A stretch of 62,874 nucleotides of DNA, the filler included, from Octopus bimaculoides (lineage: Eukaryota): the NCBI RefSeq assembly GCF_001194135.2. It is 6 parts of 6 records of this genome, joined end to end, with 100 filler letters (N's around TTAATTAATTAA, not from the genome) between each part and the next. Parts side by side here need not be neighbours in the genome. Positions count along the whole stretch, not along the records: positions 1 to 24,518 come from NC_069002.1; 5 more parts are not named here. One strand, given 5' to 3'. The notes under the pieces are model-generated. The model was not told the origin of the DNA and ran no database searches. It saw nothing but the letters and a program-made list of their open reading frames with translations. The first letter of the stretch is position 1, and each line of letters starts with the position of its first letter. Positions 395-23,547 of the stretch are shown here, piece by piece. The translations under genes were made by a program, and so were the position numbers.

Positions 395-466
395 TTTGAC
401 AATAGTGGCTTCAGCTTGCAGGCCTGGACAGATAAATGAGAGCGGTAGAGGCAAGGGGTCTTTTAT
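395..466 (-). CDS. PDCD11: RRP5/PDCD11 exon: IKDPLPLPLSFICPGLQAEATIVK; gene continues beyond the left edge
   Basis: ttttcctttcttaaccag|ATA ... AAA|gtaagt; 72 nt, phase 0/0. Matches human LNNLLPGLVVKAQVQK. Confidence 0.82.
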
Positions 467-480
467 CTGGTTAAGAAAGG

Positions 481-700
481 AAAAAAATTATACAATAAGC
501 CAGCATTTCTCAACCGGGGTTCTGTGAAAAAGAGTGAGATAAGCTAATGCTAATTTCATGATGTAATATTACTATACATGCACAACATATTATTGGTTAT
601 TGTAATATTGTAATATAGATATCATCCTATCTAACCTATTATGTTATCAAGAAAATATAACATCCATTGGGGATATATTTAGTGATATCTGTAATTTATG
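481..700 (+). mobile_element. hAT-like element 5' end, other end in the gap
   Basis: CAGCATTTCTCAACCGGGGTTC resembles Charlie-type TIR CAGTGGTTCTCAACC. Confidence 0.35.
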
Positions 701-1966
701 GAGACACTATATATATATATATATATNNNNNNNNNNNNNNNNNNNNNNNNNNNNNNNNNNNNNNNNNNNNNNNNNNNNNNNNNNNNNNNNNNNNNNNNNN
801 NNNNNNNNNNNNNNNNNNNNNNNNNNNNNNNNNNNNNNNNNNNNNNNNNNNNNNNNNNNNNNNNNNNNNNNNNNNNNNNNNNNNNNNNNNNNNNNNNNNN
901 NNNNNNNNNNNNNNNNNNNNNNNNNNNNNNNNNNNNNNNNNNNNNNNNNNNNNNNNNNNNNNNNNNNNNNNNNNNNNNNNNNNNNNNNNNNNNNNNNNNN
1001 NNNNNNNNNNNNNNNNNNNNNNNNNNNNNNNNNNNNNNNNNNNNNNNNNNNNNNNNNNNNNNNNNNNNNNNNNNNNNNNNNNNNNNNNNNNNNNNNNNNN
1101 NNNNNNNNNNNNNNNNNNNNNNNNNNNNNNNNNNNNNNNNNNNNNNNNNNNNNNNNNNNNNNNNNNNNNNNNNNNNNNNNNNNNNNNNNNNNNNNNNNNN
1201 NNNNNNNNNNNNNNNNNNNNNNNNNNNNNNNNNNNNNNNNNNNNNNNNNNNNNNNNNNNNNNNNNNNNNNNNNNNNNNNNNNNNNNNNNNNNNNNNNNNN
1301 NNNNNNNNNNNNNNNNNNNNNNNNNNNNNNNNNNNNNNNNNNNNNNNNNNNNNNNNNNNNNNNNNNNNNNNNNNNNNNNNNNNNNNNNNNNNNNNNNNNN
1401 NNNNNNNNNNNNNNNNNNNNNNNNNNNNNNNNNNNNNNNNNNNNNNNNNNNNNNNNNNNNNNNNNNNNNNNNNNNNNNNNNNNNNNNNNNNNNNNNNNNN
1501 NNNNNNNNTTCCTACGTCTGAGGGGTTAGTCTAGTCTTAAGTTAAATGGTGAGCAGAAGGAAAAAGCATCCAACTGCAAATCAACGAATTGCATTCATGG
1601 AGAGAATAGGAAATTCTACTTCTGTGCATATTATTCAGTCAGTTTACCAACAAGGGTATGAAAACCAGAATATGAAAATCAATTGAATAATGGTTTATAT
1701 ATATACATATGTCATGCAAGGTACTTGGTGACCGTGTCAGTGACAGTGCCATGTAAAAAGCCCCCAGTACACAATGTAAAGGGGTTGGCATTAGGGAGGG
1801 CATCCAGCTGTAGAAACCATGCCAAAATAGACATTGGAGCCTGACATGGCTCCCACCCTAGCCAGTTCCTATCAAACCATCCAACCCATGCCAGCATGGA
1901 AAATAGACATTAAATGATGATGATATATCCATCCATCCATCATTTTAAATTCAGGTTTTGTCCCCA

Positions 1967-2330
1967 TTAACAGGGATCGCTGGATCTACCACAATGCCAT
2001 AGCAACTGCCATCTCACCTGGTTCTGGGTGTCCTCCCTTCTCAAGCCAACCCTCCCAATCTCCTCTTCCACCTGTCCCCTCCACACTTTCCTCAGTCTAC
2101 CTTGCTTTCTCGGTCCATTCACCTCAAACTCTAGCATCCTCTTCAGAACATGCTCCTCATCCCTCCTCAACACATGCCCATACCACCACACTCCATTCGC
2201 CCTTGCCAGCCGTTCCACTGATTCCTCTGACCCCAGCATCCCCATCAAGTCCTCAGTCCTCCTCTTATCAAACAGCCTCACACCACACATTTCTCTCACC
2301 ATTGCTCTTTCAGTCTGTGAGTGTGTGTAT
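1967..2330 (-). mobile_element. RTE-clade LINE 3' fragment
   Basis: MVREMCGVRLFDKRRTEDL...ARANGVWWYGHVLRRDEEHVLKRMLEFEV.G.RKQGR is a typical RTE C-terminus. Confidence 0.85.
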
Positions 2331-2356
2331 GCATCAAATAGGGGTTAATTACGTAC

Positions 2357-2478
2357 CATTTGAGTTGCAATTTTAAAAGGATCAGCCGAGAGAGTCACAG
2401 ATCGTATCACATTCCTTTTTATGCGTGTAACATCGACAACTAAACATTGTAGCTGCTGACCCATTTTGATTTGTTTCC
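2357..2478 (-). CDS. PDCD11: RRP5/PDCD11 exon: (G)KQIKMGQQLQCLVVDVTRIKRNVIRSVTLSADPFKIATQM
   Basis: tttttctacag|GG ... ATG|gtacgt; 122 nt, phase 1/0, which completes the preceding exon's phase. Matches human GAKLKVGQYLNCIVEKV...VVSLS. Confidence 0.88.
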
Positions 2479-2699
2479 CTGTAGAAAAATCAGAAAAGGG
2501 GACATAGATATAAAAAAGGTAAACAATAATTGGTTGAGTCAGTTATTCCAGGATTAAATATCACAAAAATATAACAATGCATGAATTTGGATGAAACTTG
2601 GTGATCAGGTGTAACGATTGGAAGTGTACGCTATGAGATTTTTACTTTTTGTTGATTGTTACCTGTCATGTCATTGTCACCTGCCCAGGTAATTTGAAT

Positions 2700-3000
2700 A
2701 GAGGTATTTACAAGATATTGATTCCTGGGCATTCATTTCATGTTTCAGAGCTGAATTTGTGCTTCCATAGTTTTTTTTTTAACTTAGAAGCTGCACAGAT
2801 CTCATCAGAAAAAGCATTGCAAAATATGTCTTCGTCTCCTCGTTTGATGTAACGAATGCCATGTTGCCCTGTTGATGAACATATTTTGTAGGTGAATGCT
2901 CAATGAGCTTTGCTTCTAAATTCAAAAGCTTTACAGAGCCAGCATCACTAAGGAAAACATCAATGTAGTGATCAGTTATGAGATTATGTCACTTCTCTCA
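2700..3000 (-). mobile_element. Decayed piggyBac transposase N-terminal fragment
   Basis: DHYIDVFLSD...FVTSNEETKTYFAMLFLMRSVQL resembles the PGBD motif VT.EEMKAF.GLLILMGIVQL. Confidence 0.4.
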
Positions 3001-3139
3001 GAATCAGTTTTGAATCCAGAAATAAATCCCAGCTAGAAACACTTGAATCAATGATGCATTCAAGATGACACAGAAATAGTTCCCTGATTATCTTCTCCAA
3101 GTCTCTAACTAATTAACCCATTAATAATATCATTGAATT

Positions 3140-3353
3140 AAAGTGGCGAGCTGGCAGAAACGTTAGCACGCCGGGCGAAATGCCTAGTGATATTTTGTTG
3201 GTCTTTATGTTCTGAGTTCAAATTCCGCTGAGGTCGGCTTTACCTTTCATTCTTTTGGGGTCGATAAATTAAGTACCAGTTGCATACTAGGGTCAATCTA
3301 ATCGACTGGCTCCCTCACCCCAAATTTCGGGTCTTGTGCCTAGAGTAGAAAGG
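3140..3353 (+). mobile_element. tRNA-derived SINE family A (tail type 1)
   Basis: Head GGCGAGCTGGCAGAAACGTTAGCACGCCGGGCGAAATGC; 17-bp TSD AATAATATCA(T/C)TGAATT. Other family A copies: 28153-28342(-), 28770-28925(-), 35595-35785(+), 37950-38152(-), 48255-48425(+). Confidence 0.9.
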
Positions 3354-3581
3354 AATAATATCACTGAATTTTAACCCACCACTTGAGATATCCCACTGTG
3401 ATGCTTGAAAATTGAAGAAAAGCCTGAATAAAAAGCTAATACAAACATTGTGGTATAAACAGGAAGTCCTTTTTAAGATGAGACTAAATTTTGTTTTTCA
3501 ACCCCTAAACAAAAATTTAAATTACTGTTGCATGTAGTTCAGACTCGGTGGCAGTTGCAGCTATTTGCAGTACAGAACTGT

Positions 3582-3805
3582 AACCCTTCAGCATTTAAAT
3601 GGCCATATCTGGCCCAAATATTCTATCTGTTTTATATTTAAACTAGCCAGAACTGGCCTCTTACACTTACCCTACAATATCATTCAAAAAATATATAATC
3701 ACATCATTGAAATTTCGAAGCTATGAGATAATGCATGATTAATTCAAAATGATGTGAATAGATAAACATTACATTTGACAAAGTAGTCTGGATGCTAAAG
3801 GGTTA
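3582..3805. mobile_element. piggyBac-type MITE (second copy about 5925-6143)
   Basis: Ends CCCTTCAGCAT ... ATGCTAAAGGG flanked by (G/T)TAA and TTAA; a similar copy lies 2.3 kb away. Confidence 0.7.
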
Positions 3806-3876
3806 AGACTTATGCAATATAACTAAAGTGGTCACAAACAGAGAATAAGAAAGGCAAAACACAAAGTTTCTCTTAC

Positions 3877-3988
3877 CATCGTTATACTTGCTTGCGTTTT
3901 CCTTACTGAGGAATGCATAGACATCTTTGAGACCAATATCAATTATATACCCATGGTCTTCAATACTTTTAACACTTCCTACAAGGAT
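3877..3988 (-). CDS. PDCD11: RRP5/PDCD11 exon: ILVGSVKSIEDHGYIIDIGLKDVYAFLSKENASKYND(G)
   Basis: ttgtcttttag|ATC ... GATG|gtaaga; 112 nt, phase 0/1. Matches human [27 protein letters not shown]. Confidence 0.93.
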
Positions 3989-4385
3989 CTAAAAGACAAA
4001 AACCAGTGACAAATTTTATACTGTTTATGTGAATGTGTTAGGAAGGGCCTCCTTAACATTAGGAAAGGCATCCAGCCATCGAGATTAACAGAAAACAGAC
4101 ATGGAACCCAGGCAGCTCCCATCAAACTGTCCAACCCATGCAAGCATGGAAAATAGATGATGATGTGTCCTTAGCTCAGATCCACTGATTTTCTGTTTCT
4201 GAGTAAGTTATTGCTCTACATAGCCATTTGTTCACTTCCTTGATTGAACTGAACACAAGAAACCGTGGAAACACTGCCTGGGTAGACCGGTATACTATGA
4301 CAGTAGAGCTTTTAGCATGAATAACAGCAATGTCAGTAACTTTAAAGGCTGTGCTGCGATGCACACATCGAATGATGAAAATATA

Positions 4386-4602
4386 TGAGGGAGCGCTGAA
4401 AAGTTCCTGGCTTTGGGTAAAAGAAAATACAGGAGAATCAGTTAATTATGATTTTATCCAAAATAATCCCCTCTCAGATTCACACACTTATTGCAATGAT
4501 CTTTCAGTTTTTCTAAGCCCCGTAAAAGAACTCGGAAGGTTGGGCCTCCAGCCAGGCCTTTCGTGACACCCTTAAAGCCAGGAACTTTTCAGTACACCCT
4601 CG
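4386..4602. mobile_element. mariner-derived MITE (partial tandem copy 4639-4715)
   Basis: TIR (T/C)GAGGG..GCTGAAAAGTTCCTGGCTTT at both ends, TA TSD; 217 bp. Confidence 0.85.
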
Positions 4603-5087
4603 TATATATGTATTTGTGTATCTGTGTGTATATGTATACGAGGGGTTGCTGAAAAGTTCCTGGCTTTGGGTAAAAGAAAAGATAGGAGGGTCAGTCAATT
4701 ATGATCTTATTCAATTGTGCCGAGTTCATTTCCTCTCACCATAAATCAACAACTAAGTGTTGAATACGGTGCTGTAAGCTAATGCAACGCTTACTATTAC
4801 AGCTCTGAACTATTCCAACTCTGGGGTACTTTACCACAAATGCAGTACAGTTGGTAATCATCATCATCACCATCATTTAACGTCCACCTTCCATACTAGC
4901 ATGGGTGGGACTGTAACAAGATATGAGTTTCCACAGGCATAGCTGTGAGGTTAAGACGTTTGCTTCTTAGCCACATGGTTTTGGGGTCAATCCCAGTGTA
5001 TGGCACACTTTGGGTGAGTGCCTTCTACTATAGACCCAGGCCGACCAAAGCATTGTAAGAAATTTGGTAGACAGAAACTGAAAGAAG

Positions 5088-5317
5088 GTGACGAGCTGGC
5101 AGAAATGTTAGCACGCCGGGCGAAATGCTTAGTGGTATTTCGTCTGTCTTTACGTTCTGAGTTCAAATTCCGCCAAGGTCGACTTTGCCTTTCATCCTTT
5201 CAGGATCGATAAATTAAGTACCAGTTGCGTACTGGGGTCGATGTAATCGACTTAATCCCTTTGTCTGTCCTTGCTTGTCCCCTCTGTGTTTAGCCCCTTG
5301 TGGGCAATACAGAAATA
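5088..5317 (+). mobile_element. SINE family A (tail type 2) inserted into a family B SINE
   Basis: Exact 15-bp TSD AGAAACTGAAAGAAG (5073-5087 and 5318-5332). Confidence 0.92.
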
Positions 5318-6321
5318 AGAAACTGAAAGAAGCTCATTATCACCATCATTTAAGGTCCATTTTCCATGCTAGCATGGGTTGGACGGTTTGGTTAGAGCTG
5401 CATCGGGTTTCAGTCTGTTTCGGCTTGATTTCTACAGCTGGATGCTCTTCTTAACGCCAACCACTTTACAAAGTGTGCCAGGTGCTCTTTAAGTGGCACT
5501 GACACAGGGTACATATGTGGCACCAACATAGGTGCTTTTTATGTGGCACCAACGTGGGTGACACCAGCAAGTGCTTTTTACATGGCACTGGCACAGTGCC
5601 TTTTATGTGGCACCAGCACAGGTGCATGTTACATGGCACTGGCACAGGTGCCTTTTACATGGTACCAGCACCAACAGGGTCACTGAGTAACTTACAAGAC
5701 AAAAACCCCTTCAGCTGGGTGGGGGGCATAAACCAAGGTGGTTTAGGATAACAATTCTGTCGTGGTGGGTGGGTCTTCCTGAGTACAGCAAGGCACCAGA
5801 TACCTCTGTGATTGTAAATGAATGGCATTCATTTCCAATATTCTACAAAAACACACCTGACCTTGGGAAATCTCCCTTGATAAAATTCACCTGATTCATG
5901 CAAGCACGGAAGAGTGAACATAAATCCTTTAGCATTTAAACCGGCCATATCCAGCCCAAATATTCAACCAGCTTTTTGTTCAAGCTGGCCAGATCCAGCC
6001 CCTCACACCTATCGTACAATATCATTCTAAAAATAAACAATCACATCATTGAAATCTCAAAGCCAGGTGATAATACATGATGACTTAAAAACAATATGGA
6101 TAAATAAACATTAGATCTGACAGAGAAATCTGATTGCTAAAGGATGATGATGATGATGATGTTACTTGTCTACTGTTCTGTTGACTTGGATACCAGCACA
6201 ACTCAACACTAAGACTAACCACAATGTCATACCAATTCTGAATAATATGAAGGAAATAGTTACAATATAAAGATAACTTTCTCTGAAATGAGAGAAATTA
6301 AGGAAAAAAAATGATACTCAC

Positions 6322-6468
6322 CATATTATTTTTAATCTGAACTTGTTCTATATAGCAGTTGATATCCTCGGGAGATAAAGACAAGTCAAATGTGCCGTTT
6401 TTAGTGGATATAACCTTACAAACGATGAAAGAACCTTTTGGAAATAGGTTGGAGAGTGTGTGATCAGC
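6322..6468 (-). CDS. PDCD11: RRP5/PDCD11 exon: ADHTLSNLFPKGSFIVCKVISTKNGTFDLSLSPEDINCYIEQVQIKNNM
   Basis: ttttgtatcgacag|GCT ... ATG|gtgagt; 147 nt, phase 0/0. Matches human LPELFSPGMLVRCVVSSL...VKLSLNPKNVN. Confidence 0.9.
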
Positions 6469-7472
6469 CTGTCGATACAAAAAAAAAAAAATAATTAAAA
6501 AATACATAAACTAAAGATGGAATGAAAAATGAATAAATCAGTAAATAAATGAATATAAAAAAAAATTAAATAAAAATACACATACTAAAGACAATGAAAA
6601 ATAAATGAATAAAAAAACCTAAAGACACAGGAACAGACTGCGTAGTAAGCAAACACAATGTGGTAAGCAAACGCACATAGTAAGCACATAGACATGCATA
6701 TACACATGGACACACGAACACAGTTGCAAATGCTTGTGCAGATAAGAACATGCACTACAGAAAGACAGAATGGACTAAACAGAACAGGAGGAGATACTAG
6801 GGATGGAGAGTTAATGAAGAGGTCACAGGGATGTGTGATGAAAGATTTCAGGCAAAGGACACTAAAATCTACTATAATAATACTCTTGTGTTTTTCTCTG
6901 TCACAACATATGAATGAGAAAGAAAGGGGTGATAGATGAATAAGGAAGGAAGGGGTGAAGGATGGTGAACATCCAACGCTGAAAAGAAAAATCAAACAGC
7001 GTTTTAACTCTGTGTAAGTATATGTTTGTATGTGTGTGTGTACAAGGGAAGCATGTGAATGCGTGTGAACATTGACAAGTGTATTTGATTTATCATCCGT
7101 ATTTATATGTAAAATACTACAATTAACTGCCATTTTTGATGGCACGGGACCAGCTGGTAAGAATAATAATAAAGCTGATCTGAAGAACGAATATATAGTG
7201 CTTGTGGTTAATTGGCAAAAAACTATGACCATCCCCCAAAAGAAAAAGACTGCCATTTCTTAAAATTGGTATCATTTATCTGAAGAAACAAAAAGAAGTA
7301 ATGGAAACACTTACAAAGAGAGATAAAAAAGACTGAGAGAAGCAAAGAATAACAACCACAGGTACCAAAAGAAACAAAGTGGAGGGTAGTGACGGATTAA
7401 AGGAGGAAAACTAAAAAGACAAGAATACAAAACAAAAACAATCTGTAGAAGTAAAATATAAGCAAATCTTAC

Positions 7473-7649
7473 CAGTTGGGAAAGATTTTTTTTGCCATTT
7501 TCGACAAGAGATTTCAGATAACTTGTGTAGGTTGGAGATATGTTCGTAGCATTTACAATTCCTGTTAAACCTTTTGGCAATGCTACTTCCAAGTTCACAT
7601 TCTCTGCTTTGGTAACATAGCCATATGTCAACAGACCTTCTGTCAATAA
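7473..7649 (-). CDS. PDCD11: RRP5 homolog (PDCD11) exon, S1 domain 1: LLTEGLLTYGYVTKAENVNLEVALPKGLTGIVNATNISPTYTSYLKSLVENGKKNLSQL
   Basis: Acceptor ttttctttcatctag|TTA and donor CTG|gtaaga; 177 nt, phase 0/0. Aligns by eye to human RRP5 [45 protein letters not shown]. Confidence 0.9.
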
Positions 7650-8229
7650 CTAGATGAAAGAAAATATATAAATATACTTCAAGAAAGTAGATAATTACAA
7701 ATATTTTAGAAGTCAAATCTCCAAATTCAAGAGTGAATATGGAAACCAGGATTAGTAACACAGTTTGGATAAGATATGGAAATCTAATCTACCCTGAAAA
7801 ACTAAAATAGATTTCCTCTGAGATTGCAGCTGAATGAATTTAAGTTTGTGGTTTGATAATATGGACACTGACAGCTCCCAGATATGAGAATTTTTATTAA
7901 TCACTACAATTGTTTTGTTATTTAACAATGTGTTTATGTATCTATGTATCAACTTTTCTTTTGATCTATGTATCTACTTTTCTTGCAGTGTTATAAACAT
8001 TTAAAAACACAAAATGAATGCCGTCACCACTCACTGTCCCTTTCTCTCTCACTTCCTCTCTGTAACAGTTAAAAACACAAACAAATGCTGTCATCACTCA
8101 CTGTCTCTTTCCCTCTCCCTCTCTCGCTTTATCACTCACTTCATCCTTTGAAGTAAGTGTGACACACACCACAGGTATGACCGTACAAAAAGAACAAGTT
8201 GGCATATTAATATTACTGATGATTCCATG

Positions 8230-8720
8230 TCGGACCATGTCTTCCACAATGGATAAGCCTCTGGATCAGGATGGGTTTCTGTATTATTTGGGGTAATTTA
8301 TAATGTCTCAATAAATGAAGTTGCTTTGTTTTTCCATTTGGGCGCACAGATGTAAAGATTTCTTGTCTAACATAGAGGTGACCATTGGTGAAGCAGGACT
8401 CTTCAAGGTGTATGAGAGGATGCTGAAAAGTTCCTGGCTTTAAGGGTATTGTGAAAGGCCTGGTTGGAGGTCCAACCTTCTGCGTTCTTTTATAGGGCTT
8501 AGAAAAACTGAAGGACTGCTGCAATAACTGTGTGAATCTGAGAGGGGAATATGTTCAATAAAATCATAATTAACTGATCCTCCTGTATTTTCTTTTACCC
8601 AAAGCCAGGAACTTTTCAGCACCCCCTCATAAACTGGTAACCAAAAGCATTTGTCCTTGCGATTTGTTGATGGTTACAGCAAAACTAAGACTCACTGGAA
8701 ATTGAATTGAAAAGGACATC
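8230..8720 (-). mobile_element. Helitron Pif1-like helicase C-terminal remnant split by the MITE
   Basis: Removing the MITE and one TA gives QFPVSLSFAVTINKSQGQMLLVTSLHLEESCFTNGHLYV, then PNGKTK (Pif1 motifs V/VI typical of Helitrons). Confidence 0.85.
8414..8629. mobile_element. mariner-derived MITE, same family as 4386-4602, opposite orientation
   Basis: Same TIRs, TA at 8412-8413 and 8630-8631; 216 bp. Confidence 0.88.
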
Positions 8721-9244
8721 ATTATCTCCTGAGTCTGTGTGACAGAGGCTCTTGTGCACTTATCAATTGATGTATTCTATGCTCAGGTGACTCCTGAGTC
8801 TCTGCAGCAGATGCTCATTTTCGCAGATCATCAAATCTCTTCTGTCTCTGTTTGGGTGTCTCCTGAACTCACTGCTGATGCTTTGTGAAGGTCTTTCGGT
8901 TCTGTCACCCAAATGAACTTCCTTACATACTCTCACACACACACTCAATTAGTAACCTGACTAGCCCTCTCTTAAGGGCCAAAAGACGCTTCATCTGCCA
9001 GCAATTATTGTTTCTCTACAAAGCTCAGGTGAGGTCCATAACGAAATATTGCTCTCACATCTAGGTTACAGCTCCTGCTTCACAGACAGACATCCTAGAC
9101 CACACCCAAAAACAAATCCAGAGACACACTCCTATTTCTGGCCCAGAGGCGCAGTCTCCTCTCTTTGCCTTTCCTACCGCTGCTATAATAGCCTTTGATC
9201 CACGGCTTGGTTCATACAATCTCTACCCAGGTTTTCCTGATTAA

Positions 9245-9560
9245 CTCGTTTTCCCCCACATCAACTCCATGTCGAAACTCCCCCTGCACTCACCGCAATG
9301 AACGCCGGCTTCTTGAAGCCCTACTTTGTGGAAGTTTTGTTTTAGATGTTCAAGAGGAACATTAACGGCATTGGTTAATGTTTACAAGTACCACGGCATT
9401 TATCTCACCAATTTAGGTGGCCCTACGAAAGGCAAAAAGGTCCTTTCCTTTCCGATTGCGTGTCCAACTACTTTGCCAATCGAATGCTCCATAACAACAT
9501 CATGTTTGCATTTTAGAAACAGAGATCCATCAATTTGAACAACGACATTCTCACCACTTA
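9245..9560 (-). mobile_element. Possible Merlin/IS1595-type transposase remnant
   Basis: SGENVVVQIDGSLFLKCKH resembles GG...VQIDESLF.KRKY; later TNAV and ELMW resemble HTN.VE and EFMWR; in-frame stops. Confidence 0.45.
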
Positions 9561-9789
9561 TAACTTAGTTCAATCAGATATTGAATGAATCTTCCATTCA
9601 TTTACAGTATTACGACGGCCTATTTATTGATTGTATTTTGCTATATTTTTAAACTGTTATCAACCATCCATCCATCAAGTGAACAGCTGATGGTAGTTTA
9701 TAATGAATTAGCACGCTGACAATTTCCTTTTTGAATTCCTGAAACCGATTTAATTGTCTCTATACTTAACGACGCATAAACCATTGCAA

Positions 9790-10180
9790 CACGTGACATT
9801 TTAAAACTATTTTTTTCATATCAAATTATCAAAAAATAATCTTACAATACTTCATAAACAGTAGAGTCTTTAAAAATATGATTATTACTCCAAATAACCA
9901 TTTATAATTAAAATAAACAATTAAAACCATCACAATACCTGTCCATACATCTTATATCAGTTTGGTTCGACTGAACATGTGGAGTAAATTGCTGCTTTCG
10001 TGCTTCCGGTTCTAATTCACGTGCTGAGTTAGTACACAATATTTTCGAATTTTAGCTATTATCTAATTAAATAATTAAGTTTATATTTAAACATTGATAT
10101 TTTCAGACAGTTATTAACAAACTTCTAAAATGCAATTATAACAAAATAACAATTTTTATGAATATATTCACGTGTTGAGT
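9790..10180. promoter_or_regulatory. Candidate bidirectional promoter region
   Basis: ETS-type CTTCCGG at 10003-10009 and CACGTG E-boxes at 9790, 10018 and 10169. Repeat-poor interval between a minus-strand donor (9938) and a plus-strand donor (10440). Confidence 0.4.
9939..10010 (-). other. Candidate first exon of PDCD11 (5' UTR plus possible MYGQ start)
   Basis: aagATG TAT GGA CAG|gtattg (ATG at 9950) is phase 0 and would join the 7649 exon in frame. It begins near a CCGGAAG motif. No transcript evidence. Confidence 0.3.
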
Positions 10181-10330
10181 TACAACACAATTAATACTTT
10201 CGAATTTTTGCTATTTTTTTTTATCAACTCATTAAATTTATTTAAACAAATATATGTAAAAATTAATGTTTTTAGATTGCTATTAATATTAGATTGTTAT
10301 TAATACTAAATTTAAAATATGATAAATAAC
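10016..10330. repeat. Degenerate ~150-bp tandem duplication
   Basis: TTCACGTG(C/T)TGAGTTA..ACACAAT....TTTCGAATTTT.GCTATT begins at both ~10016 and ~10167. Confidence 0.6.
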
Positions 10331-10369
10331 AATAATAACTTCTTTTTATAAATATAATCATTTCTTAGT

Positions 10370-10439
10370 TTCGTACAGCAGACATCGTAGCAAAGTCTCC
10401 AGGTCGCTGTTCCCTTAGTCGAAGACAAATAACTTCAAG
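10370..10439 (+). other. Candidate non-coding 5' exon of ATP5MK
   Basis: Strong donor TTCAAG|gtacgt at 10440. The ATP5MK coding exon at 15622 has an acceptor, so an upstream exon is required. The link is inferred. Confidence 0.3.
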
Positions 10440-11117
10440 GTACGTTTAAAATGCTTATAAAATTACCACAATTTACATCAAAGTTAAACACATATGTATA
10501 TCGGCTCCCTTCTATATTATTCTTACGTTTCCATATCTTTTGCAATGCAGATTTATTATTTATATTCCATTAATTAAAATGTTATTTAGAGGACATTTCT
10601 GAACAGGAAAACCTGAAGGGCACTTGCGACTGTTTCTTCTCTCTCACTCATCAAATATAACCTACTTTATTTTTATTTAAGATCTTGCCAAAAGAAGAAT
10701 GGTATGATCTGAAAATTCAGATTCAAGTTTACAGGAATAATTTTCTTTTATAATTCTTGAAATATTTTTGGGGCGCAAACTTGACTGTTGAATTCGTAAC
10801 ATCACATGTAATCGTTTTATATGTTGCATTATTTTTATTTAAAAGTAAATGGATACAACGAGTAATATTCAGTTATTCAATCGCCAGAATAAGTTACTCG
10901 TTGAATAAATAGTGTTATTGGCTGAGAATTCCGCAGACACTTGTAGTATCCTTAACGTAACCTTCAAACGAGCCAAGAAAGAAGCCGCTACGCAATTATT
11001 AAACCTGCTATGAATAGAAGTAAAATATACCCCGAATCACATACTACCGTCTTATAAAAATAAAAAAGGACGGAATGATAACCCCGTTAAAATTTACCGA
11101 AATGTCATAACGTACTT

Positions 11118-12620
11118 ATTAACCCATTGCTTGTCTTGTGTATCCTATGTGCTATACAAGATCTGTTCTCTGGTGTCCATGCATCATATTTGATACATAT
11201 TCCCAAGTATTTTCCAACTACCACAGTAATTTGGGATTTATGAAAAGGAAGCTTTATATTATTCAGAGTGGAGGCGCAATGGTGCAGTGGTTAGGGCAGC
11301 GGACTCGCAGTTTCGATTCCCAGACCAGGCGTTGTGAGTGTTTATTGAGCAAAAACACCTAAAGCTCCACGAGGCTCTGGCAGGGGATGGTGGCGAACCC
11401 TGCTGTATTCTTCCACCACAACTTTCTCTCACTCTTACTTCCTGTTTCTATTGTGCCTGTAATTCAAAGGTTCAGCCTTGTCACATTGTGTCACGCTGAA
11501 TATCCCCGAGAACTACGTTAAGGGTACACGTGTCTGTGGAGTGCTCAGCCACTTGCACGTTAATTTCACGAGCAGGCTGTTCCGTTGATTGAATCAACTG
11601 GAACCCTCGACGTCGTAAGCGACGGAGTGCCAACAAAAATTATTCAGAACTTATGAAACAAGGACTAATTAAATGTTTGAAAACAAGTATAGACGTTTAG
11701 AACTTGTGAAACGGTTTAAGTGCTTTCAGCTCATCTTCAGTCCTCACCAGGTGTATTTTTTTTAAAAAAAGTCTTTTCATGAAAAGGTATTTGCAATAAT
11801 TCACTTAAAAAAAAAAAAAAANNNNNNNNNNAAAAAAAAGAAGAGAAAAACTGAACTGATCTTTGAATTCATTGAATTCTTCACATAACAGGATTAATGT
11901 CAAAGTTCATTGACATTTCTAAAAGTAAACAGTAAGAAAATGGAAGAAGGGAGGGAGAATAAAGAAAAAAAAAAACCTGTAAATAAGTCCTCAAAACAGG
12001 CATGCACATTCTCTTAATTATTCCTCCCATCAAGGGAAACTGGTGTTTACCTCTATTCATGTATGTCTGTTGTTTTGTCTGTCCTGTGTGTGACATGTGA
12101 TACAAAGGACATATTTCTCTGACACCCTCTGGCATCCATGGATCATATATAATACAGTCCCAATTTTTTCTCAAACACCAGAGTAACTTGGGACTTATGA
12201 AAAGAAAGCTTTATATTACCCAGAAGCAAGGTCGAACTAAATGTCTGAAAACAAGCACAGAAGGTTAGGACTAACATATGGAAATGCTTTGGGCAGGCAA
12301 AGAGTTAATATTGCAGATAATCTCTCTATAAAGACACATTTTGTATGACATAGTTCATCAATGTCCTACAAAAACTGCTTCTTCTAACAGAGCCTCTTAA
12401 TCCCTTGCCTCTCCTGTATATCATTTGTGGTACACAAGACATATTTCTCTGGTGTCCGTGCATTATATATGATACACATTCCCAATTTTTTCTCAACAAC
12501 CAGAGTAACTTGGGACTTACGAAAGGAAAGCTTTATATTACTCCGAAGCAAGGTAGTCTAACTAAATATCTGAAAACAAGCACTTACTTATGGAAATGCT
12601 TTGGGTAAGCAAAGAGCTAA
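11118..12620. mobile_element. Three local copies of a ~200-250 bp TTAA-type MITE (about 11118-11720 split by a SINE, 12085-12308, 12396-12620)
   Basis: Shared core CCAGAGTAACTTGGGACTTA(T/C)GAAA.GAAAGCTTTATATT...TGAAAACAAG. Ends resemble TTAA-CCC(A/T)TTGC ... GCAAAGAG-TTAA. Confidence 0.6.
11268..11638 (+). mobile_element. tRNA-derived SINE family D
   Basis: Head GGAGGCGCAATGG..CAGTGGTTAGGG; tail GGAGTGCCAACAA; 10-bp TSD ATTATTCAGA. Other copies: 18159-18531(-, TSD GAACAATGT), 42906-43205(-); variants 20545-20830 and 33340-33580. Confidence 0.9.
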
Positions 12621-14473
12621 TACCACTAATACCACGGCACGCAAAAGCACCCACTACACTCTCAGAGTGGTTGGCGTTAGAAAGGGCATCCAGCTGTAGA
12701 AATTCTGCCAAATCAGATTGGAGCCTGGTGTAGCCATCTGGTTCACCAGTCCTCAAGTCAAATCGTCCAACCCATGCTAGCATGGAAAGCGGACGTTAAA
12801 CGATGATGATGATGTGTTCTGTTGTGTAGCTGGAGTATATATTCTGATTCTGGGATCAGTACATGTCTGTTGAAAATGTTTGTGTGTGTGCACTAGCGTA
12901 GCTAGAGTATGTGCCGCCCAGGGTGGCCCTTCTCTTTGCCTGGACCCCACAAAAAACACATATTGCCTACAACAGGATAAAAAGTGCCACCTGGAGCGGA
13001 CCATCTCCCCCCGCCAGCTATTCTAGTGTGTGTTCTGTTGTGTGGATGGGCTGATTGTATGTCTACTGAGACCATTGAGTGTGTGTACGTGTACGTAAAT
13101 ATTCCAAATCTAAGATTTCTGTCTCTTGAGGTTATGGATCACTACTTTGCAAAGCTCATCTCCAAGGCTCAGGCCTGGTTAAGGCTCTTTTACCTGCAAG
13201 ACCCAAAGTTGCTCATTCTGGCAGGTCTCTCCTTCCCATGCCATTTATGTTGTCCAAGAGAATCGTAAGAACCAATACAGTGTGGAACCAGTGGCATTGC
13301 AAGTGCTACCATTAATGCAAAGAGCCAGTATTAAATGCTACAAGATCTCTTGTCTTATTCTCTCACAATTACACCAATTCAATGCTCTGGACCGGTACTT
13401 TATTTACTGACCTTGAAAGGAAGTACGACAAAGTTGATCGTTTGTTTTTGAACTCAAACTGCTGAGAGCTGGAGCAATCCAATGCACACTCAATTCTGTC
13501 AGTTCACTGTGAATGAAATGATAAGTGTGTGTGTGTGTGTGTGGAGATGGAAGTGGGGTTCTGAAGTGAACAGAAGGGCATTTATCGGTGTAGTGATGGT
13601 GGTGAGAGTGGTGTTACTTAAAGAAAACAAGGTCATTATTCTACTCAATGGAAAATTAGCTGTTCATGGTGCAAGTAGGAGGCAGCTGATTCATCATCAC
13701 CATTTAACGTCCGTTTCCCCTGCTGGCATGGGTTAGATGGCTTGGCAGGAACTGGCAAGGCCAGGGGCTGCATCAGGTTCCATAGTCTGATTTAGATTGA
13801 TTTCTACAGCTGGATGCCCTTTCTAAAGCCCATCACTTTATAGCATGGACTGGGTGCTTTTTATGTGGCACCAGCACCAGTGTTTTTTACATGGCACTTT
13901 GGTTTTAGGATCTCACTTCAATATTGTGGTGGGTGGGTCTTCCTGTGTACAGTAAGGCACCACATATCTTGGTCCTCTCTCATCTTTTTTGTAAGGCTCA
14001 GCATTTTTAGATCAGCCTTCAATACTTTGTCCCATGTCTTCCTGGGTATCTCATTCCACAACTTCCCTCCGCTTTAAGTGGAAAAAAATATATATAAGAG
14101 GAGAAATGCAGCCAAGACGATTGAGATGATAAGCTACTTATTGGAGTGATCTGGTGTTTGACGTCTAAAAGACCTGTAAACCTACACTCACTGGGCCCTG
14201 ACTCTGTACCCAGTCTATCCCCATCAAGCCTTATCTACCCTTCATCGTCCTAATATTTATCCCTCCAAACTTCTAACTACGGCTAACTGTTCACCTTACC
14301 TGTTGTAATGAGATGAGAGCAGAAGCTGCGCAGATTTCCTCCAGTTACCTCCCCTTCCTGCTTGGAAACGCTGCCTTTTAAAAATTCTTCCCTCTTTCTC
14401 AGTATTCTCTCTTCCCACCTCAGTTTCCACCAATCGTCCCTTTCTGCTCCTCTTTATTATTAGTTAATTGGTT

Positions 14474-14703
14474 AGTTATTTAACCAACCAGCTGGTCAGT
14501 TGTTTGCTTAATCAGTTGATTAAACAATCGATCGGTTGTCTGTCAAAACCGTTTTTATCACCGTTCACAACCTCATCTATGGAGAAGAGAGGGCATGTTA
14601 TTGCTGAGGTGTTGTGAATGGTAAGGAAAGGACTTGGACAGTCGACTGATTGATTAATCCACAGATTAAGCAGGTGATCAATTTGTTGTTCAGTTAAATA
14701 ACT
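14474..14703. repeat. Imperfect ~100-bp inverted repeat with 29-nt loop
   Basis: Arms 14474-14575 and 14605-14703 align as reverse complements at roughly 70% by eye. Confidence 0.75.
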
Positions 14704-14800
14704 GGGACAAAGTGGTGAGAAAAGATCTTCAGATGCTGGGCCTCAGTGAAGAAATGACAAGGGACCAGGAGATGCGGCGATTTGCCGTACTTGATAGGAT
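14703..14800 (+). mobile_element. RTE LINE extreme 3' fragment
   Basis: WDKVVRKDLQMLGLSEEMTRDQEMRRFAV followed by (CAT)n. Confidence 0.65.
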
Positions 14801-15630
14801 GCACCATCATCATCATCGTCGTTTAACGTCCGCTTTCCATGCTAGCATGGGTTGGACGATTTGACTGAGGACTGGTGAACCAGAGGGCTACACCAGGCTC
14901 CAATCTGATTTGGCAGAGTTTCTACAGCTGGATGCCCTTCCTAATGCCAACCACTCAGAGAATGTAGTGGGTGCTTTTTACATGCCACTGGCACGAAGGC
15001 CAGTCAGGCGGTACTGGCAACGGCCACGTTCAAAATGGTGTATTTTTTGTGCCACCCGCACNNNNNNNNNNNNNNNNNNNNNNNNNNNNNNNNNNNNNNN
15101 NNNNNNNNNNNNNNNNNNNNNNNNNNNNNNNNNNNNNNNNNNNNNNNNNNNNNNNNNNNNNNNNNNNNNNNNNNNNNNNNNNNNNNNNNNNNNNNNNNNN
15201 NNNNNNNNNNNNNNNNNNNNNNNNNNNNNNNNNNNNNNNNNNNNNNNNNNNNNNNNNNNNNNNNNNNNNNNNNNNNNNNNNNNNNNNNNNNNNNNNNNNN
15301 NNNNNNNNNNNNNNNNNNNNNNNNNNNNNNNNNNNNNNNNNNNNNNNNNNNNNNNNNNNNNNNNNNNNNNNNNNNNNNNNNNNNNNNNNNNNNNNNNNNN
15401 NNNNNNNNNNNNNNNNNNNNNNNNNNNNNNNNNNNNNACGAAGGCAAGTTAAACCTGTGTGTGTTTATTGCTGGTGTAATGACCTTCCAAGATACAACAA
15501 ACTTGTTTCAACACGTGTTCATATCAAAAATCGTACAAACCAAACACCGAAATAAAATATTTTTAATTTATTCATTTGCTATCTATATTTTCTCTTATTT
15601 TCTTACTCTTTCTTTTGAAAGGTTACTACA

Positions 15631-15720
15631 ATGGCTGGCGGATTTCTCTCAGAGGCCGAAACCGGGTTTACCGGCATGAAATACTATTTCAATTCTTACA
15701 CCCGACGAGGACGTTTCAAT
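15631..15720 (+). CDS. ATP5MK: ATP synthase membrane subunit K (USMG5/DAPIT), coding exon 1: MAGGFLSEAETGFTGMKYYFNSYTRRGRFN
   Basis: Acceptor ttcttttgaaag| at 15621, acaATGG start context, donor AAT|gtaagt. FTGMKYYFNSYTRRGRFN matches human FTGIKKYFNSYTLTGRMN. Confidence 0.94.
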
Positions 15721-15837
15721 GTAAGTAAACAGAGTTCTCTCCCCTTCGCTCCTATACATCCATCTTCTCCCCCCCCACACACACCTCACTGAAATGCCTT
15801 GGACTCATTGTTTCTTTCTTTCTTTTCTTCTTTCTAG

Positions 15838-15930
15838 TGTGTTGCTGCTGTTTATGGCACCATTATTGGAGCTGTTGTCTTAAGGAAAATGACCAAAAAA
15901 AAGAAGCCAGCAGAAGTAAAAGCTAATTAA
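15838..15930 (+). CDS. ATP5MK: ATP5MK coding exon 2: CVAAVYGTIIGAVVLRKMTKKKKPAEVKAN*
   Basis: Long pyrimidine tract ending ctag|TGT after a 117-nt intron, phase 0. Matches human CVLATYGSIALIVLYFKLRSKKTPAVKAT: one TM helix plus a basic tail. Total 60 aa. Confidence 0.94.
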   Translation, partial: CVAAVYGTIIGAVVLRKMTKKKKPAEVKAN

Positions 15931-15976
15931 TATCAACCCTCAGCATTAGCATGTGTATAATTAGGCCTGATTATAT

Positions 15977-16028
15977 AATAAAACAATTATAAACACACTT
16001 CACTGAGGAATGTTTTATTTATAATAAA
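15977..16028 (+). terminator. Polyadenylation signals of ATP5MK
   Basis: AATAAA at 15977-15982 and 16023-16028 downstream of the stop, followed by GT/T-rich sequence. Confidence 0.55.
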
Positions 16029-16106
16029 CCAATGTTAGTGTATGGATTTTGTTTTCTTTATTCTACTTCTTTCTCTTATCTCCTTCAGTCGTAAATCTTC
16101 TCAATA

Positions 16107-16279
16107 TAGGCGCAGGAGTGCTGTGTGGTAAGTAGCTTGCTTACCAACCACATGGTTCCGGGTTCATTCCCACTGTGTGGCACTTTGGGCAAGTGTCTTC
16201 TACTATAGCCTCGGGCCAACCAAAGCCTTGTGAGTGGATTTGGTAGACGGAAAACTGAAAGAAGCCCGTCGTATATATG

Positions 16280-16312
<33 letters not shown>

Positions 16313-16545
16313 GTGNNNNNNNNNNNNNNNNNNNNNNNNNNNNNNNNNNNNNNNNNNNNNNNNNNNNNNNNNNNNNNNNNNNNNNNNNNNNNNNNNNNAA
16401 CTTAGCAGTTTGGCAAAAAGAGATCGATAGAATAAGTACTAGGCTTTCAAAGAATAAGTCCTGGGGTCGATTTGCTCAACTAAAAGGTAGTGCTCCAGCA
16501 TGGTCGCAGTCAAATGACTGAAACAAGTAAAAGAGTAATGAGTAA
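16107..16545 (+). mobile_element. tRNA-derived SINE family B with internal microsatellite
   Basis: A/B-box-like head GGCGCAGGAGTG.CTGTGTGGTAAG...GGTTCA.TCCC; tail GACTGAAACAAGTAAAAGA. Other copies: 1-172, 4935-5087, 21381-21765, 32598-33240, 52690-52873 (+) and 60712-61205 (-). Confidence 0.9.
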
Positions 16546-17863: not shown

Positions 17864-17919
17864 CTGCAGAAAAAAAAAAAACATGGGCAAGGGAATTTTA
17901 TAAAGCTAACAATCTGCTA

Positions 17920-22545: not shown

Positions 22546-22549
22546 GACT

Positions 22550-23100: not shown

Positions 23101-23140
<40 letters not shown>

Positions 23141-23471: not shown

Positions 23472-23547
<76 letters not shown>

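What the first reader, a model, noticed from the sequence alone, without database searches (positions are those of the whole stretch)
395..15930. PDCD11 and ATP5MK are head-to-head here, apparently as in human
Seen: RRP5/PDCD11 exons on the minus strand and a complete ATP5MK CDS on the plus strand, divergent, with no other gene recognisable between them. Recalled knowledge: human USMG5/ATP5MK and PDCD11 are divergent neighbours at 10q24.33 with closely spaced 5' ends. Inference: a ribosome-biogenesis / ATP-synthase bidirectional pair may date to the bilaterian ancestor. Survival in a coleoid genome would be notable because these genomes are known for scrambled synteny.
Basis: partly seen in the sequence, partly recalled or inferred. 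Interest (0 to 1): 0.85.

Follow-up and report, generated by a model that had tools for sequence, protein, structure and literature searches.

The report
Octopus PDCD11–ATP5MK head-to-head gene pair
In this Octopus bimaculoides window the ribosome-assembly gene PDCD11/RRP5 and the small ATP-synthase subunit gene ATP5MK really do sit back-to-back on opposite strands as in human, and an acorn worm has the same layout, so this is probably an old animal gene pair, which is a known kind of thing.

Summary
The window is Octopus bimaculoides. Six minus-strand exons (9950-9939 down to 466-395) give exactly the first 214 residues of RefSeq RRP5 homolog XP_052831721.1. Two plus-strand exons (15631-15720, 15838-15930) give the 60-aa ATP5MK/DAPIT protein, already in UniProt as A0A0L8H936. 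Only SINE-like repeats lie between them.

The gaps at 11822 and 15062 are not misjoins: their flanks are collinear with a gap-free O. vulgaris chromosome, where the same two genes are divergent with predicted CDS starts 212 bp apart.

The likely shared promoter is at about 9950-10440, not next to the ATP5MK ATG. ATP5MK appears to have non-coding 5' exon(s) and a roughly 5.2 kb first intron. This rests on gene models, not on transcripts.

Across other animals the pattern is patchy:
- Head-to-head: human and chicken (literature) and the hemichordate Ptychodera flava (2.2 kb, found here).
- Adjacent but tail-to-tail: amphioxus.
- No ATP5MK within 10 kb of PDCD11: scallop, limpet, Owenia, Lingula, a crinoid, lamprey and a damselfly.

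Bilaterian ancestry with repeated loss is the best reading. It is a new example of a known class, conserved 5'-5' pairs. Coleoids keep about as many ancient microsyntenies as scallop, so its survival here is not exceptional.

The parts
9939..9950 (-). PDCD11/RRP5 first coding exon as modelled (ATG TAT GGA CAG | GT, 'MYGQ'). The 5' UTR probably extends to about 9990.
   Evidence: It matches the start of XP_052831721.1 and A0A0L8H8U7. O. vulgaris has ATG TCT GAA CAG | GT at the same aligned place, with a conserved donor and an in-frame upstream TGA in both species. There is no homology to other RRP5 N-termini.
7473..7649 (-). PDCD11 exon 2 (LLTEGLLTYGYV...NLSQL), the start of the first S1 domain.
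   Evidence: N-terminal HMM E = 4e-12. The exon starts at or within a few residues of the start of the equivalent exon in scallop, Owenia, Lingula, Antedon, Lottia, amphioxus, Ptychodera, lamprey and damselfly.
6322..6468 (-). PDCD11 exon 3
   Evidence: Aligns to Rrp5 in PDB 6rxy.
3877..3988 (-). PDCD11 exon 4 (ILVGSVKSIEDHGYIIDIG...)
   Evidence: Aligns to the human RRP5 S1 domain in PDB 1wi5, E = 2.3e-11.
2357..2478 (-). PDCD11 exon 5
395..466 (-). PDCD11 exon 6, the last one inside the window. The next exon (DEGSYLAAKF...) is not in the window.
9951..10439 (.). Inferred shared (bidirectional) promoter region plus 5' non-coding ATP5MK exon(s). It contains an ETS-type site CCGGAAGC at 10002-10009 (minus strand), E-boxes TCACGTG at 10017-10023 and 10168-10174, candidate ATP5MK donors at 10031|10032 (GAGTTA|GTACAC) and 10439|10440 (CTTCAAG|GTACGT), and a tandem ~150-bp duplication.
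   Evidence: In O. vulgaris the called PDCD11 CDS start (L001 9789) and ATP5MK CDS start (L001 10001) map here. This is the only CCGGAAGC in 24.5 kb, against 0.18 expected. A 37-nt run spanning the ETS site and E-box is identical between the two species. CpG observed/expected is highest here, 1.4-1.5. There are no transcript data.
10440..15621 (+). Inferred long first/second intron of ATP5MK. It is filled with SINE-like repeats and holds the assembly gaps 11822-11831 and 15062-15437.
   Evidence: Collinear with O. vulgaris L001 10967-15968. Repeats. No Pfam hits.
15622..15720 (+). ATP5MK exon carrying the ATG (CDS 15631-15720, MAGGFLSEAETGFTGMKYYFNSYTRRGRFN). It is preceded by a polypyrimidine tract and an AG acceptor 9 nt before the ATG.
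   Evidence: The O. vulgaris 76-aa isoform reads through this acceptor (...FK|VTTMAGG).
15838..15930 (+). ATP5MK last coding exon (CVAAVYGTIIGAVVLRKMTKKKKPAEVKAN, then the stop codon). AATAAA signals follow at 15977 and 16023.
   Evidence: The intron is phase 0 after Asn30. Amphioxus and Ptychodera have the intron in the same position.

Best explanation
The window holds the 5' part of the O. bimaculoides PDCD11/RRP5 gene on the minus strand and the whole ATP5MK (DAPIT, ATP synthase subunit k) gene on the plus strand. They are true divergent neighbours with nothing but repeats between them.

Their 5' ends most likely meet at about 9950-10440. PDCD11 starts with a 12-nt coding mini-exon at 9950. 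ATP5MK starts with one or two short non-coding exons, then a roughly 5.2 kb repeat-filled intron, before the ATG exon at 15622. Transcription of both would be driven from one short AT-rich interval that carries a conserved ETS (GABP-type) site and E-box(es), the same motif class reported for the human PDCD11/ATP5MK promoter.

The head-to-head arrangement is most likely inherited from the bilaterian ancestor. It was retained in octopus, hemichordates and amniotes, rearranged locally in amphioxus, and broken in many other lineages.

Shown: gene identities, exon structures, orientation, absence of intervening genes, collinearity with O. vulgaris, and presence or absence in ten other animal loci. 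Inferred: the TSS positions, the sharing of the promoter, co-regulation, and ancestry.
For: - Exons and orthology.
- O. vulgaris chromosome OX597835.1: an RRP5-type gene (S1_RRP5, Suf) on the minus strand ends at L001 9789 and the ATP5MK gene (PF14960) on the plus strand runs 10001-16280. The window and L001 are collinear from 1718 to 17472 across both inner gaps.
- Evidence that the ATP5MK ATG exon is internal: an acceptor lies 9 nt upstream of the ATG, the O. vulgaris isoform is spliced onto it, a ~400-bp SINE sits 26-40 bp upstream of that acceptor in O. vulgaris only, and the 15062 gap corresponds to SINE sequence.
- Promoter motifs. Human ETS motifs and bidirectional activity.
- Ptychodera flava: ATP5MK on the minus strand (ATG at 7812), PDCD11 on the plus strand (ATG at 10001), no called gene between.
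- Amphioxus: ATP5MK lies 2 kb beyond the PDCD11 3' end, convergent.
- Chicken: a USMG5 intron SNP is annotated as upstream of PDCD11 and downstream of TAF5.
- Chance (my own arithmetic): even with both genes confined to one ancestral linkage group of about 1000 genes, a given head-to-head pairing has a probability of about 5e-4 per lineage. Two or more among 11 lineages comes to about 1e-5.
Against: - No transcript, CAGE or ATAC data were available. The octopus 5' exons come from automated gene models. One of them is a 15-nt micro-exon, and the modelled upstream 'coding' peptides are not conserved (MYGQ vs MSEQ; TNNFK vs TNCFK).
- The interval is AT-rich (25% GC). Outside the short ETS/E-box block it is no better conserved between the two octopuses than the flanking introns (84.7% vs 85-90%).
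- Seven of the eleven non-human lineages sampled, including all four non-cephalopod lophotrochozoans, lack ATP5MK within 10 kb of PDCD11. Several have another gene head-to-head with PDCD11.
- The amphioxus orientation differs.
- Octopus PDCD11 lacks the canonical first exons, so its present 5' end is not the ancestral one.
Confidence: 0.68

Rival explanations
1. Neighbours but no shared promoter. ATP5MK would be transcribed from just upstream of its ATG exon (about 15440-15620, or inside the 15062-15437 gap). The two 5' ends would then be about 5.6 kb apart, and the upstream ATP5MK exons in the O. vulgaris model would be annotation artefacts.
For: The only evidence for the upstream exons is one O. 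vulgaris isoform (76 aa) that contains a 15-nt exon. A second, 60-aa isoform exists whose 5' end I could not see (one search failed). In O. bimaculoides the second copy of the repeated unit lacks the GT donor used in O. vulgaris.
Against: A strong polypyrimidine/AG acceptor lies 9 nt before the ATG, and the same structure is present in Ptychodera and amphioxus. The sequence directly upstream of the acceptor is interrupted by a SINE in O. vulgaris, and the gap region is SINE too. The donors CAAG|GTACGT and GAGTTA|GTACAC are conserved in both species.
Confidence: 0.2
2. Independent (convergent) juxtaposition. The pair would have formed separately in the octopus lineage and in deuterostomes, and is not ancestral to bilaterians.
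For: Scallop, Lottia, Owenia and Lingula, the four other lophotrochozoans sampled, and the damselfly all lack the pair. Coleoid genomes created many new microsyntenies. Octopus PDCD11 has a remodelled 5' end.
Against: The same two non-paralogous genes are adjacent in three phyla. Random re-creation of one specific head-to-head pair is of the order of 1e-4 to 1e-3 per lineage (my arithmetic), whereas loss of a two-gene adjacency over more than 500 million years is common (Irimia 2012).
Confidence: 0.1
3. ATP5MK is nested antisense inside a long 5' intron of PDCD11. The true FPRGG-containing first exons would lie beyond ATP5MK, and the modelled start at 9950 would be an internal exon.
For: Every other animal PDCD11 examined begins with an M..FPRGG exon followed by a Lys-rich exon. 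Octopus models lack about 75 N-terminal residues.
Against: No FPRGG-type exon was found on either strand anywhere in the window up to 24518, or in the gap-free O. vulgaris locus, which reaches 10 kb past ATP5MK. An in-frame stop lies 9 nt upstream of the modelled ATG in both species. Three separate annotations (the older UniProt-recorded O. bimaculoides model A0A0L8H8U7, RefSeq isoform X2, and the O. vulgaris annotation) start at the same exon.
Confidence: 0.05
4. Scaffold misjoin at one of the N gaps brings two unlinked genes together artificially.
For: Three gaps lie inside the finding. The 2015-type Illumina contigs are fragmentary.
Against: The independent, gap-free O. vulgaris chromosome has the same order and orientation, with flanks matching on both sides of the 11822 and 15062 gaps. 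The 727-1508 gap lies between consecutive in-frame exons.
Confidence: 0.02

Closest known systems
Human ATP5MK (USMG5/DAPIT) - PDCD11 bidirectional promoter, chr10:103,396,330-103,396,860 (hg38)
   Same: The same two orthologous genes, divergently transcribed with no gene between. ETS-type motifs lie in the inter-gene interval. A 531-bp human fragment drives reporters in both directions (PMC9740945), and ETS sites lie at both TSSs (PMC10175485).
   Different: In octopus the ATP5MK coding exons are 5.7 kb from the PDCD11 start codon because of an inferred long 5' intron. The interval is AT-rich. PDCD11 lacks the canonical FPRGG N-terminal exons. No functional or transcript evidence exists here.
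Conserved ancestral microsyntenic pairs (CAMPs) of Irimia et al. 2012, e.g. HSPD1-HSPE1
   Same: A non-paralogous gene pair kept adjacent across phyla, in the 5'-5' orientation that is enriched among such pairs and is attributed to shared promoters.
   Different: The distribution is much patchier than for HSPD1-HSPE1: the pair is absent in 7 of 11 non-human lineages sampled, and the orientation changed in amphioxus. I could not check whether this pair is already in their list, because the supplement is not held.
Ancient metazoan microsyntenies retained in coleoids (Schmidbaur et al. 2022)
   Same: An ancient linkage that survives in a cephalopod genome despite large-scale reorganisation. Such blocks tend to be co-expressed.
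   Different: I take those blocks to hold more than two genes (from memory, not checked). This is a two-gene pair, and their supplementary text does not mention PDCD11, RRP5, USMG5 or ATP5MK.

Membership tests
ATP5MK / DAPIT / ATP synthase subunit k (Pfam PF14960 ATP_synth_reg) | Sequence scores above the family's curated threshold | tested here: met
   53.2 bits against a cut-off of 25, covering profile positions 1-50 of 50.
ATP5MK / DAPIT / ATP synthase subunit k (Pfam PF14960 ATP_synth_reg) | Closest solved proteins are subunit k of mitochondrial ATP synthase. About 58-60 aa, with the FTGxKxYFNSYTxxGRxN motif followed by one hydrophobic helix and a basic tail. | tested here: met
   PDB 6tt7_O, 6zbb_k and 9bxu_i, E = 4e-12 to 1e-11, aligned over residues 6-58. 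Alignments.
ATP5MK / DAPIT / ATP synthase subunit k (Pfam PF14960 ATP_synth_reg) | An intron-containing locus rather than a processed copy, with the intron position shared with other animals | tested here: met
   A phase-0 intron after Asn30 in octopus, amphioxus and Ptychodera.
ATP5MK / DAPIT / ATP synthase subunit k (Pfam PF14960 ATP_synth_reg) | The protein is a physical subunit of the octopus ATP synthase | not testable with these tools
   Needs proteomics or a structure.
RRP5 / PDCD11 | N-terminal array of S1 domains of the RRP5 type | tested here: met
   PF23459 S1_RRP5 scores 27.4 bits against a cut-off of 27, which is borderline. PF00575 S1 scores 29.2 against 22. PDB Rrp5 6rxy E = 4e-12 and human RRP5 S1 domain 1wi5 E = 2e-11. 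The top matches among 1.84 billion representative proteins were named RRP5 homologs wherever I looked up names.
RRP5 / PDCD11 | C-terminal HAT/Suf (TPR-like) repeats | tested here: inconclusive
   This region lies outside the window. The O. vulgaris gene at the same place carries PF05843 Suf and HAT families. The O. bimaculoides RefSeq models stop at 776/781 aa without them.
RRP5 / PDCD11 | Conserved N-terminal M..(E/D)xFPRGG motif and Lys-rich segment before the first S1 domain | tested here: not met
   Present in about 70 representative orthologs and as first exons in 9 animal loci. Absent from the window and from the gap-free O. vulgaris locus. Orthology still holds on the S1 region. The octopus protein appears N-terminally shortened, or its start is mis-modelled.
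Bidirectional (head-to-head) gene pair with shared promoter | Opposite strands, divergent, no intervening gene | tested here: met
Bidirectional (head-to-head) gene pair with shared promoter | Transcription start sites less than about 1 kb apart | tested here: inconclusive
   212 bp separate the modelled CDS starts in O. vulgaris. The equivalent window positions are about 9950 and about 10030-10440. No TSS data.
Bidirectional (head-to-head) gene pair with shared promoter | Promoter activity in both directions, or co-expression | not testable with these tools
   Only motif evidence is available.
Conserved ancestral microsyntenic pair (as defined by Irimia et al. 2012) | Adjacency of the same non-paralogous orthologs in several distant phyla | tested here: met
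   Mollusca (two Octopus species), Hemichordata (Ptychodera), Cephalochordata (amphioxus) and Vertebrata (human, chicken). I did not apply their formal lineage-count threshold.
Conserved ancestral microsyntenic pair (as defined by Irimia et al. 2012) | Conserved relative orientation | tested here: inconclusive
   5'-5' in octopus, Ptychodera, human and chicken. 3'-3' in amphioxus.

The most novel reading that the evidence does not exclude
The ATP5MK-PDCD11 promoter is an urbilaterian regulatory unit. An ETS/GABP-plus-E-box bidirectional promoter would couple a ribosome-assembly factor to an ATP-synthase dimer-associated subunit, and would have been kept for more than 550 million years in octopus, hemichordates and amniotes. 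In octopus it would have survived even while the PDCD11 5' coding exons were lost and a 5-kb repeat-filled intron opened inside ATP5MK. That would mean selection acts on the promoter sharing itself rather than on the neighbouring sequence.
Probability: 0.4. Interest if true: 0.5.

Novelty: new member of a known kind. Interest (0 to 1): 0.35.

Why it matters
If the pair is ancestral, it adds a clean two-gene case to the catalogue of deeply conserved 5'-5' pairs. It links a growth-related nucleolar factor with a mitochondrial ATP-synthase subunit. It also gives a tractable test of whether such pairs persist because the promoter is truly shared: a short octopus, hemichordate or human fragment in a two-way reporter, with the ETS site and E-box mutated.

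It also shows that local adjacency can survive in Octopus where the broader neighbourhood did not. That is no longer surprising, since coleoids are reported to keep as many ancient microsyntenies as scallop.

Both octopus genes are already annotated and the human promoter is already described. The gain is therefore incremental.

Tried and rejected
- A word-indexed homolog search with the concatenated PDCD11 exons gave only one fungal-like fragment. The exhaustive representative search was needed instead.
- The ATP5MK profile search was swamped by mammalian genes and processed copies and returned no invertebrates beyond two cephalopods. ATP5MK loci of other invertebrates therefore could not be looked up directly. 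I went through PDCD11 loci and scanned their flanks with my own HMM.
The 76-aa isoform worked.
- I searched for the canonical PDCD11 first exon by regex and by an HMM built from about 70 N-termini, on both strands. Nothing was found in the window or in O. vulgaris. This rejects the idea that it hides in the 11822 or 15062 gaps, because the gap-free O. vulgaris sequence lacks it too.
- I searched the window for the O. vulgaris ATP5MK exon-1 peptide and did not find it. DNA alignment showed why: the region is non-coding and diverged.
- The Sinanodonta locus returned no DNA.
- Rfam, tRNA and Pfam scans of the intergenic ORFs were all negative.
- Literature: no paper in the searchable library discusses evolutionary conservation of this pair. 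The Irimia 2012 supplement is not held. The Schmidbaur 2022 supplements do not mention either gene.
- Inter-species conservation of the promoter block is not statistically distinguishable from the intronic background, so I do not use it as evidence beyond the motifs.


Full report
**What is in the window.** The sequence is Octopus bimaculoides. The exhaustive protein search returned a 776-aa protein that is 100% identical to my exon translations (P0122). The cluster look-up names it XP_052831721.1, 'protein RRP5 homolog isoform X2 [Octopus bimaculoides]'.

Six minus-strand exons lie at 9950-9939, 7649-7473, 6468-6322, 3988-3877, 2478-2357 and 466-395. All have canonical acceptor and donor sites. 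Spliced together they translate exactly to residues 1-214 of that protein. The region is RRP5-type:
- Pfam S1_RRP5 and S1 match.
- PDB Rrp5 (6rxy) and the human RRP5 S1 domain (1wi5) are the best solved relatives.
- The best representatives among 1.84 billion proteins were named RRP5 homologs of animals wherever I looked up names.

On the plus strand, 15631-15720 and 15838-15930, joined across a GT..AG intron, give MAGGFLSEAETGFTGMKYYFNSYTRRGRFNCVAAVYGTIIGAVVLRKMTKKKKPAEVKAN. This scores 53.2 bits on Pfam PF14960 against a cut-off of 25. It matches DAPIT/subunit k chains of ovine, bovine and other mammalian ATP synthase structures at about 1e-11 to 4e-12. It is identical to UniProt A0A0L8H936, 'Up-regulated during skeletal muscle growth protein 5', O. 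bimaculoides.

The intron sits after Asn30 in phase 0, as in the amphioxus and Ptychodera genes I reconstructed. This is therefore the real gene and not a processed copy.

**Gaps.**
- The 10-N gap at 11822 sits inside a poly-A run. Its flanks align to one continuous stretch of the O. vulgaris chromosome.
- The left flank of the 376-N gap at 15062 is a SINE-like repeat. The right flank (ACGAAGGCAAGTTAAACC...) resumes exactly where O. vulgaris resumes after its own SINE copy. The gap therefore hides repeat sequence, not an exon or a promoter.
- The 782-N gap at 727 lies in the intron between two exons that are consecutive and in frame in the RefSeq model, and no residues are missing relative to the scallop ortholog. 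O. vulgaris DNA did not reach this gap.
- Overall the window is collinear with O. vulgaris from 1718 to 17472, so a misjoin is excluded for the part that matters.

**Nothing else lies between the genes.** Self-comparison shows the interval is full of interspersed repeats. None of ten ORFs tested there hits Pfam. There is no Rfam family and no tRNA.

**Where the 5' ends are.** The nearest PDCD11 exon with recognisable homology starts at 7649, 8 kb from the ATP5MK ATG.

The O. vulgaris locus (chromosome OX597835.1, gap-free) has an RRP5-type gene (S1_RRP5, Suf) on the minus strand ending at locus position 9789. The ATP5MK gene (PF14960) runs on the plus strand from 10001 to 16280. That is 212 bp between the modelled CDS starts, with ATP5MK spanning 6.3 kb. 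These positions map to window about 9950 and about 10165.

The PDCD11 start is a 12-nt mini-exon: ATG TAT GGA CAG|GT in O. bimaculoides and ATG TCT GAA CAG|GT in O. vulgaris. The donor is conserved and an in-frame TGA lies 9 nt upstream in both species. The older UniProt-recorded O. bimaculoides model A0A0L8H8U7, RefSeq isoform X2 and the O. vulgaris annotation all use it.

Several observations indicate that the ATP5MK ATG exon is internal:
- The ATG exon is preceded by a polypyrimidine tract and an AG 9 nt before the ATG.
- The 76-aa O. vulgaris isoform is spliced onto exactly that acceptor from upstream exons at L001 10001-10024 and 10952-10966.
- The donors GAGTTA|GTACAC (window 10031|10032) and CTTCAAG|GTACGT (10439|10440) are conserved.
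- O. vulgaris carries a ~400-bp SINE only 26-40 bp upstream of the acceptor, where O. bimaculoides has none. That is hard to reconcile with a core promoter at that spot.

I therefore place the shared promoter at about 9950-10440 and infer a roughly 5.2 kb first intron in ATP5MK. All of this rests on gene models and sequence logic. I had no transcript data.

**Promoter content.** The only CCGGAAGC (ETS/GABP-type) site in the 24.5-kb window is at 10002-10009, 52 bp upstream of the PDCD11 ATG, against 0.18 expected per window. TCACGTG E-boxes lie at 10017-10023 and 10168-10174. A 37-nt stretch spanning the ETS site and the first E-box is identical in the two species. CpG observed/expected peaks here at 1.4-1.5, although GC is only 23-25%.

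The human PDCD11/ATP5MK promoter has ETS motifs at both TSSs (PMC10175485) and drives reporters in both directions (PMC9740945). From general knowledge, GABP/NRF-2 and Myc/USF E-boxes are typical of nuclear-encoded mitochondrial genes and ribosome-biogenesis genes. Coupling through these factors is my inference.

**Octopus PDCD11 lacks the canonical N-terminus.** About 70 representative RRP5 orthologs start M..(E/D)xFPRGG followed by a Lys-rich segment. In scallop, Owenia, amphioxus, Lingula, Antedon, Lottia, Ptychodera, lamprey and damselfly an HMM finds this exon at the gene start. In those loci the first S1 exon also starts at or within a few residues of the octopus boundary (LLTEGLL...). 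Neither the window up to 24518 nor the gap-free O. vulgaris locus, which reaches 10 kb beyond ATP5MK, contains such an exon on either strand. Either octopus RRP5 has lost about 75 N-terminal residues, or its first exons lie more than 10 kb away. The second case would nest ATP5MK in a PDCD11 intron, and I rate it unlikely.

**Comparative survey.** I fetched PDCD11 loci with 10-kb flanks and scanned all six frames with an ATP5MK HMM. I repeated the scan with a broader HMM that includes the new invertebrate sequences.

Positive results:
- Ptychodera flava (hemichordate): ATP5MK is on the minus strand (ATG at 7812, stop at 4657) and PDCD11 on the plus strand (ATG at 10001). The genes are head-to-head with 2188 bp between start codons and no called gene between.
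- Branchiostoma floridae: PDCD11 runs 10001-35060 on the plus strand and ATP5MK 38721-37065 on the minus strand. The genes are adjacent but tail-to-tail, 2 kb apart.

Negative results, within the gene and 10 kb either side:
- Argopecten irradians, where the head-to-head neighbour is an acyl-CoA dehydrogenase.
- Lottia gigantea, where the neighbour is a UPF0172 gene.
- Owenia fusiformis, with MRP-S26 7 kb upstream.
- Lingula anatina, with a UQ_con gene upstream.
- Antedon mediterranea.
- Petromyzon marinus.
- Hetaerina americana.

The Sinanodonta locus gave no DNA. From the literature, human is head-to-head. Chicken has a USMG5 intron SNP annotated as upstream of PDCD11 and downstream of TAF5, which is the human layout.

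**Reading the distribution.** A specific pair of non-paralogous genes becoming head-to-head neighbours by chance has a probability of the order of 1e-4 per lineage, or about 5e-4 if both are confined to one ancestral linkage group of about 1000 genes. Seeing it in octopus and a hemichordate as well as amniotes, plus adjacency in amphioxus, is then about 1e-5 or less (my arithmetic).

Loss of a two-gene adjacency over half a billion years is the usual fate. The conserved exceptions are enriched for 5'-5' pairs (Irimia et al. 2012). Ancestry in the bilaterian ancestor with many losses is therefore the best explanation. Convergence is a minor rival. It remains open because Octopus is the only protostome with the pair among the six sampled.

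**How notable is it.** It belongs to a known class, conserved ancestral microsyntenic 5'-5' pairs with bidirectional promoters. Coleoids are reported to retain 275 ancient metazoan microsyntenies against 216 in scallop (Schmidbaur et al. 2022), so survival in a coleoid is not in itself remarkable. Both octopus genes are already annotated and the human promoter is described. I rate it a new member of a known kind, of modest interest.

**Limits.**
- There were no TSS, expression or chromatin data.
- Only one locus per taxon was examined, with 10-kb flanks, so 'absent' means 'not within 10 kb'.
- ATP5MK loci of the negative taxa could not be fetched.

Noticed in passing
window 7650-24518 (minus strand) and L001 (O. 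vulgaris) whole locus: Octopus PDCD11/RRP5 lacks the near-universal N-terminal M..FPRGG exon and the Lys-rich exon, about 75 aa in all. These are present as first exons in all nine other animal loci examined. The octopus models start with a 4-codon mini-exon instead (MYGQ in O. bimaculoides, MSEQ in O. vulgaris). This is either a real N-terminal truncation or a start that every annotation has missed.
   Followed up: partly
P0122/P0272 (XP_052831721.1, XP_052831720.1); window 8722 for the isoform X1 start: The O. bimaculoides RefSeq RRP5 models are only 776 and 781 aa and end in what looks like read-through into an intron (...MVIYIYLIFIQINVCFTICKKKKRRNNW). The O. vulgaris product is 1260 aa and other animals have about 1800 aa. 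Isoform X1 starts with MMSFSIQFP at window 8722. The gene is probably split or truncated in this assembly.
   Followed up: no
L008 4657-7812 (-) and L004 37065-38721 (-): Intact two-exon ATP5MK genes in Ptychodera flava (64 aa) and Branchiostoma floridae (56 aa) are absent from the called-gene lists of these loci. They were found only by six-frame HMM scanning. Such short genes are easily missed by annotation, which can hide microsynteny.
   Followed up: partly
window 15585-15630; L008 about 7813-7850; L004 about 38722-38760: In octopus, Ptychodera and amphioxus the ATP5MK ATG is preceded within 9-13 nt by a polypyrimidine tract and an AG. This suggests that a non-coding first exon spliced just before the start codon is an old feature of the gene.
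   Followed up: partly
window 10015-10093 / 10166-10248; L001 9856-10155 and 10725-10871: A tandem ~150-bp duplication lies inside the inferred promoter, shared with O. vulgaris, where more sequence is duplicated. The two species have lost different features in the second copy: O. bimaculoides keeps the E-box but lacks the GT donor, while O. vulgaris keeps the donor but lacks the E-box.
   Followed up: partly
window 1740-1925, 5331-5505, 12638-12814, 13684-13898, 14805-15061, 23671-23927; also 1-188 / 16399-16538 / 21586-21776; and 11255-11639 vs 18161-18541 (inverted, 90%): At least three families of SINE-like interspersed repeats, 130-385 bp and 70-95% identical, populate the introns and the intergenic space. 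One copy abuts the 15062 gap. Several insertions differ between O. bimaculoides and O. vulgaris.
   Followed up: partly
window 21804-22424 (-): A 206-aa ORF with a reverse-transcriptase domain (RVT_1, 53.7 bits). It is a retrotransposon fragment downstream of ATP5MK and is not part of the finding.
   Followed up: partly
window 16000-24518: No gene is recognisable downstream of ATP5MK, either in the window or among the called genes of the O. vulgaris locus. In human and chicken TAF5 lies tail-to-tail with ATP5MK (the human layout is from memory). Only the two-gene pair, not the wider neighbourhood, appears to be shared.
   Followed up: partly
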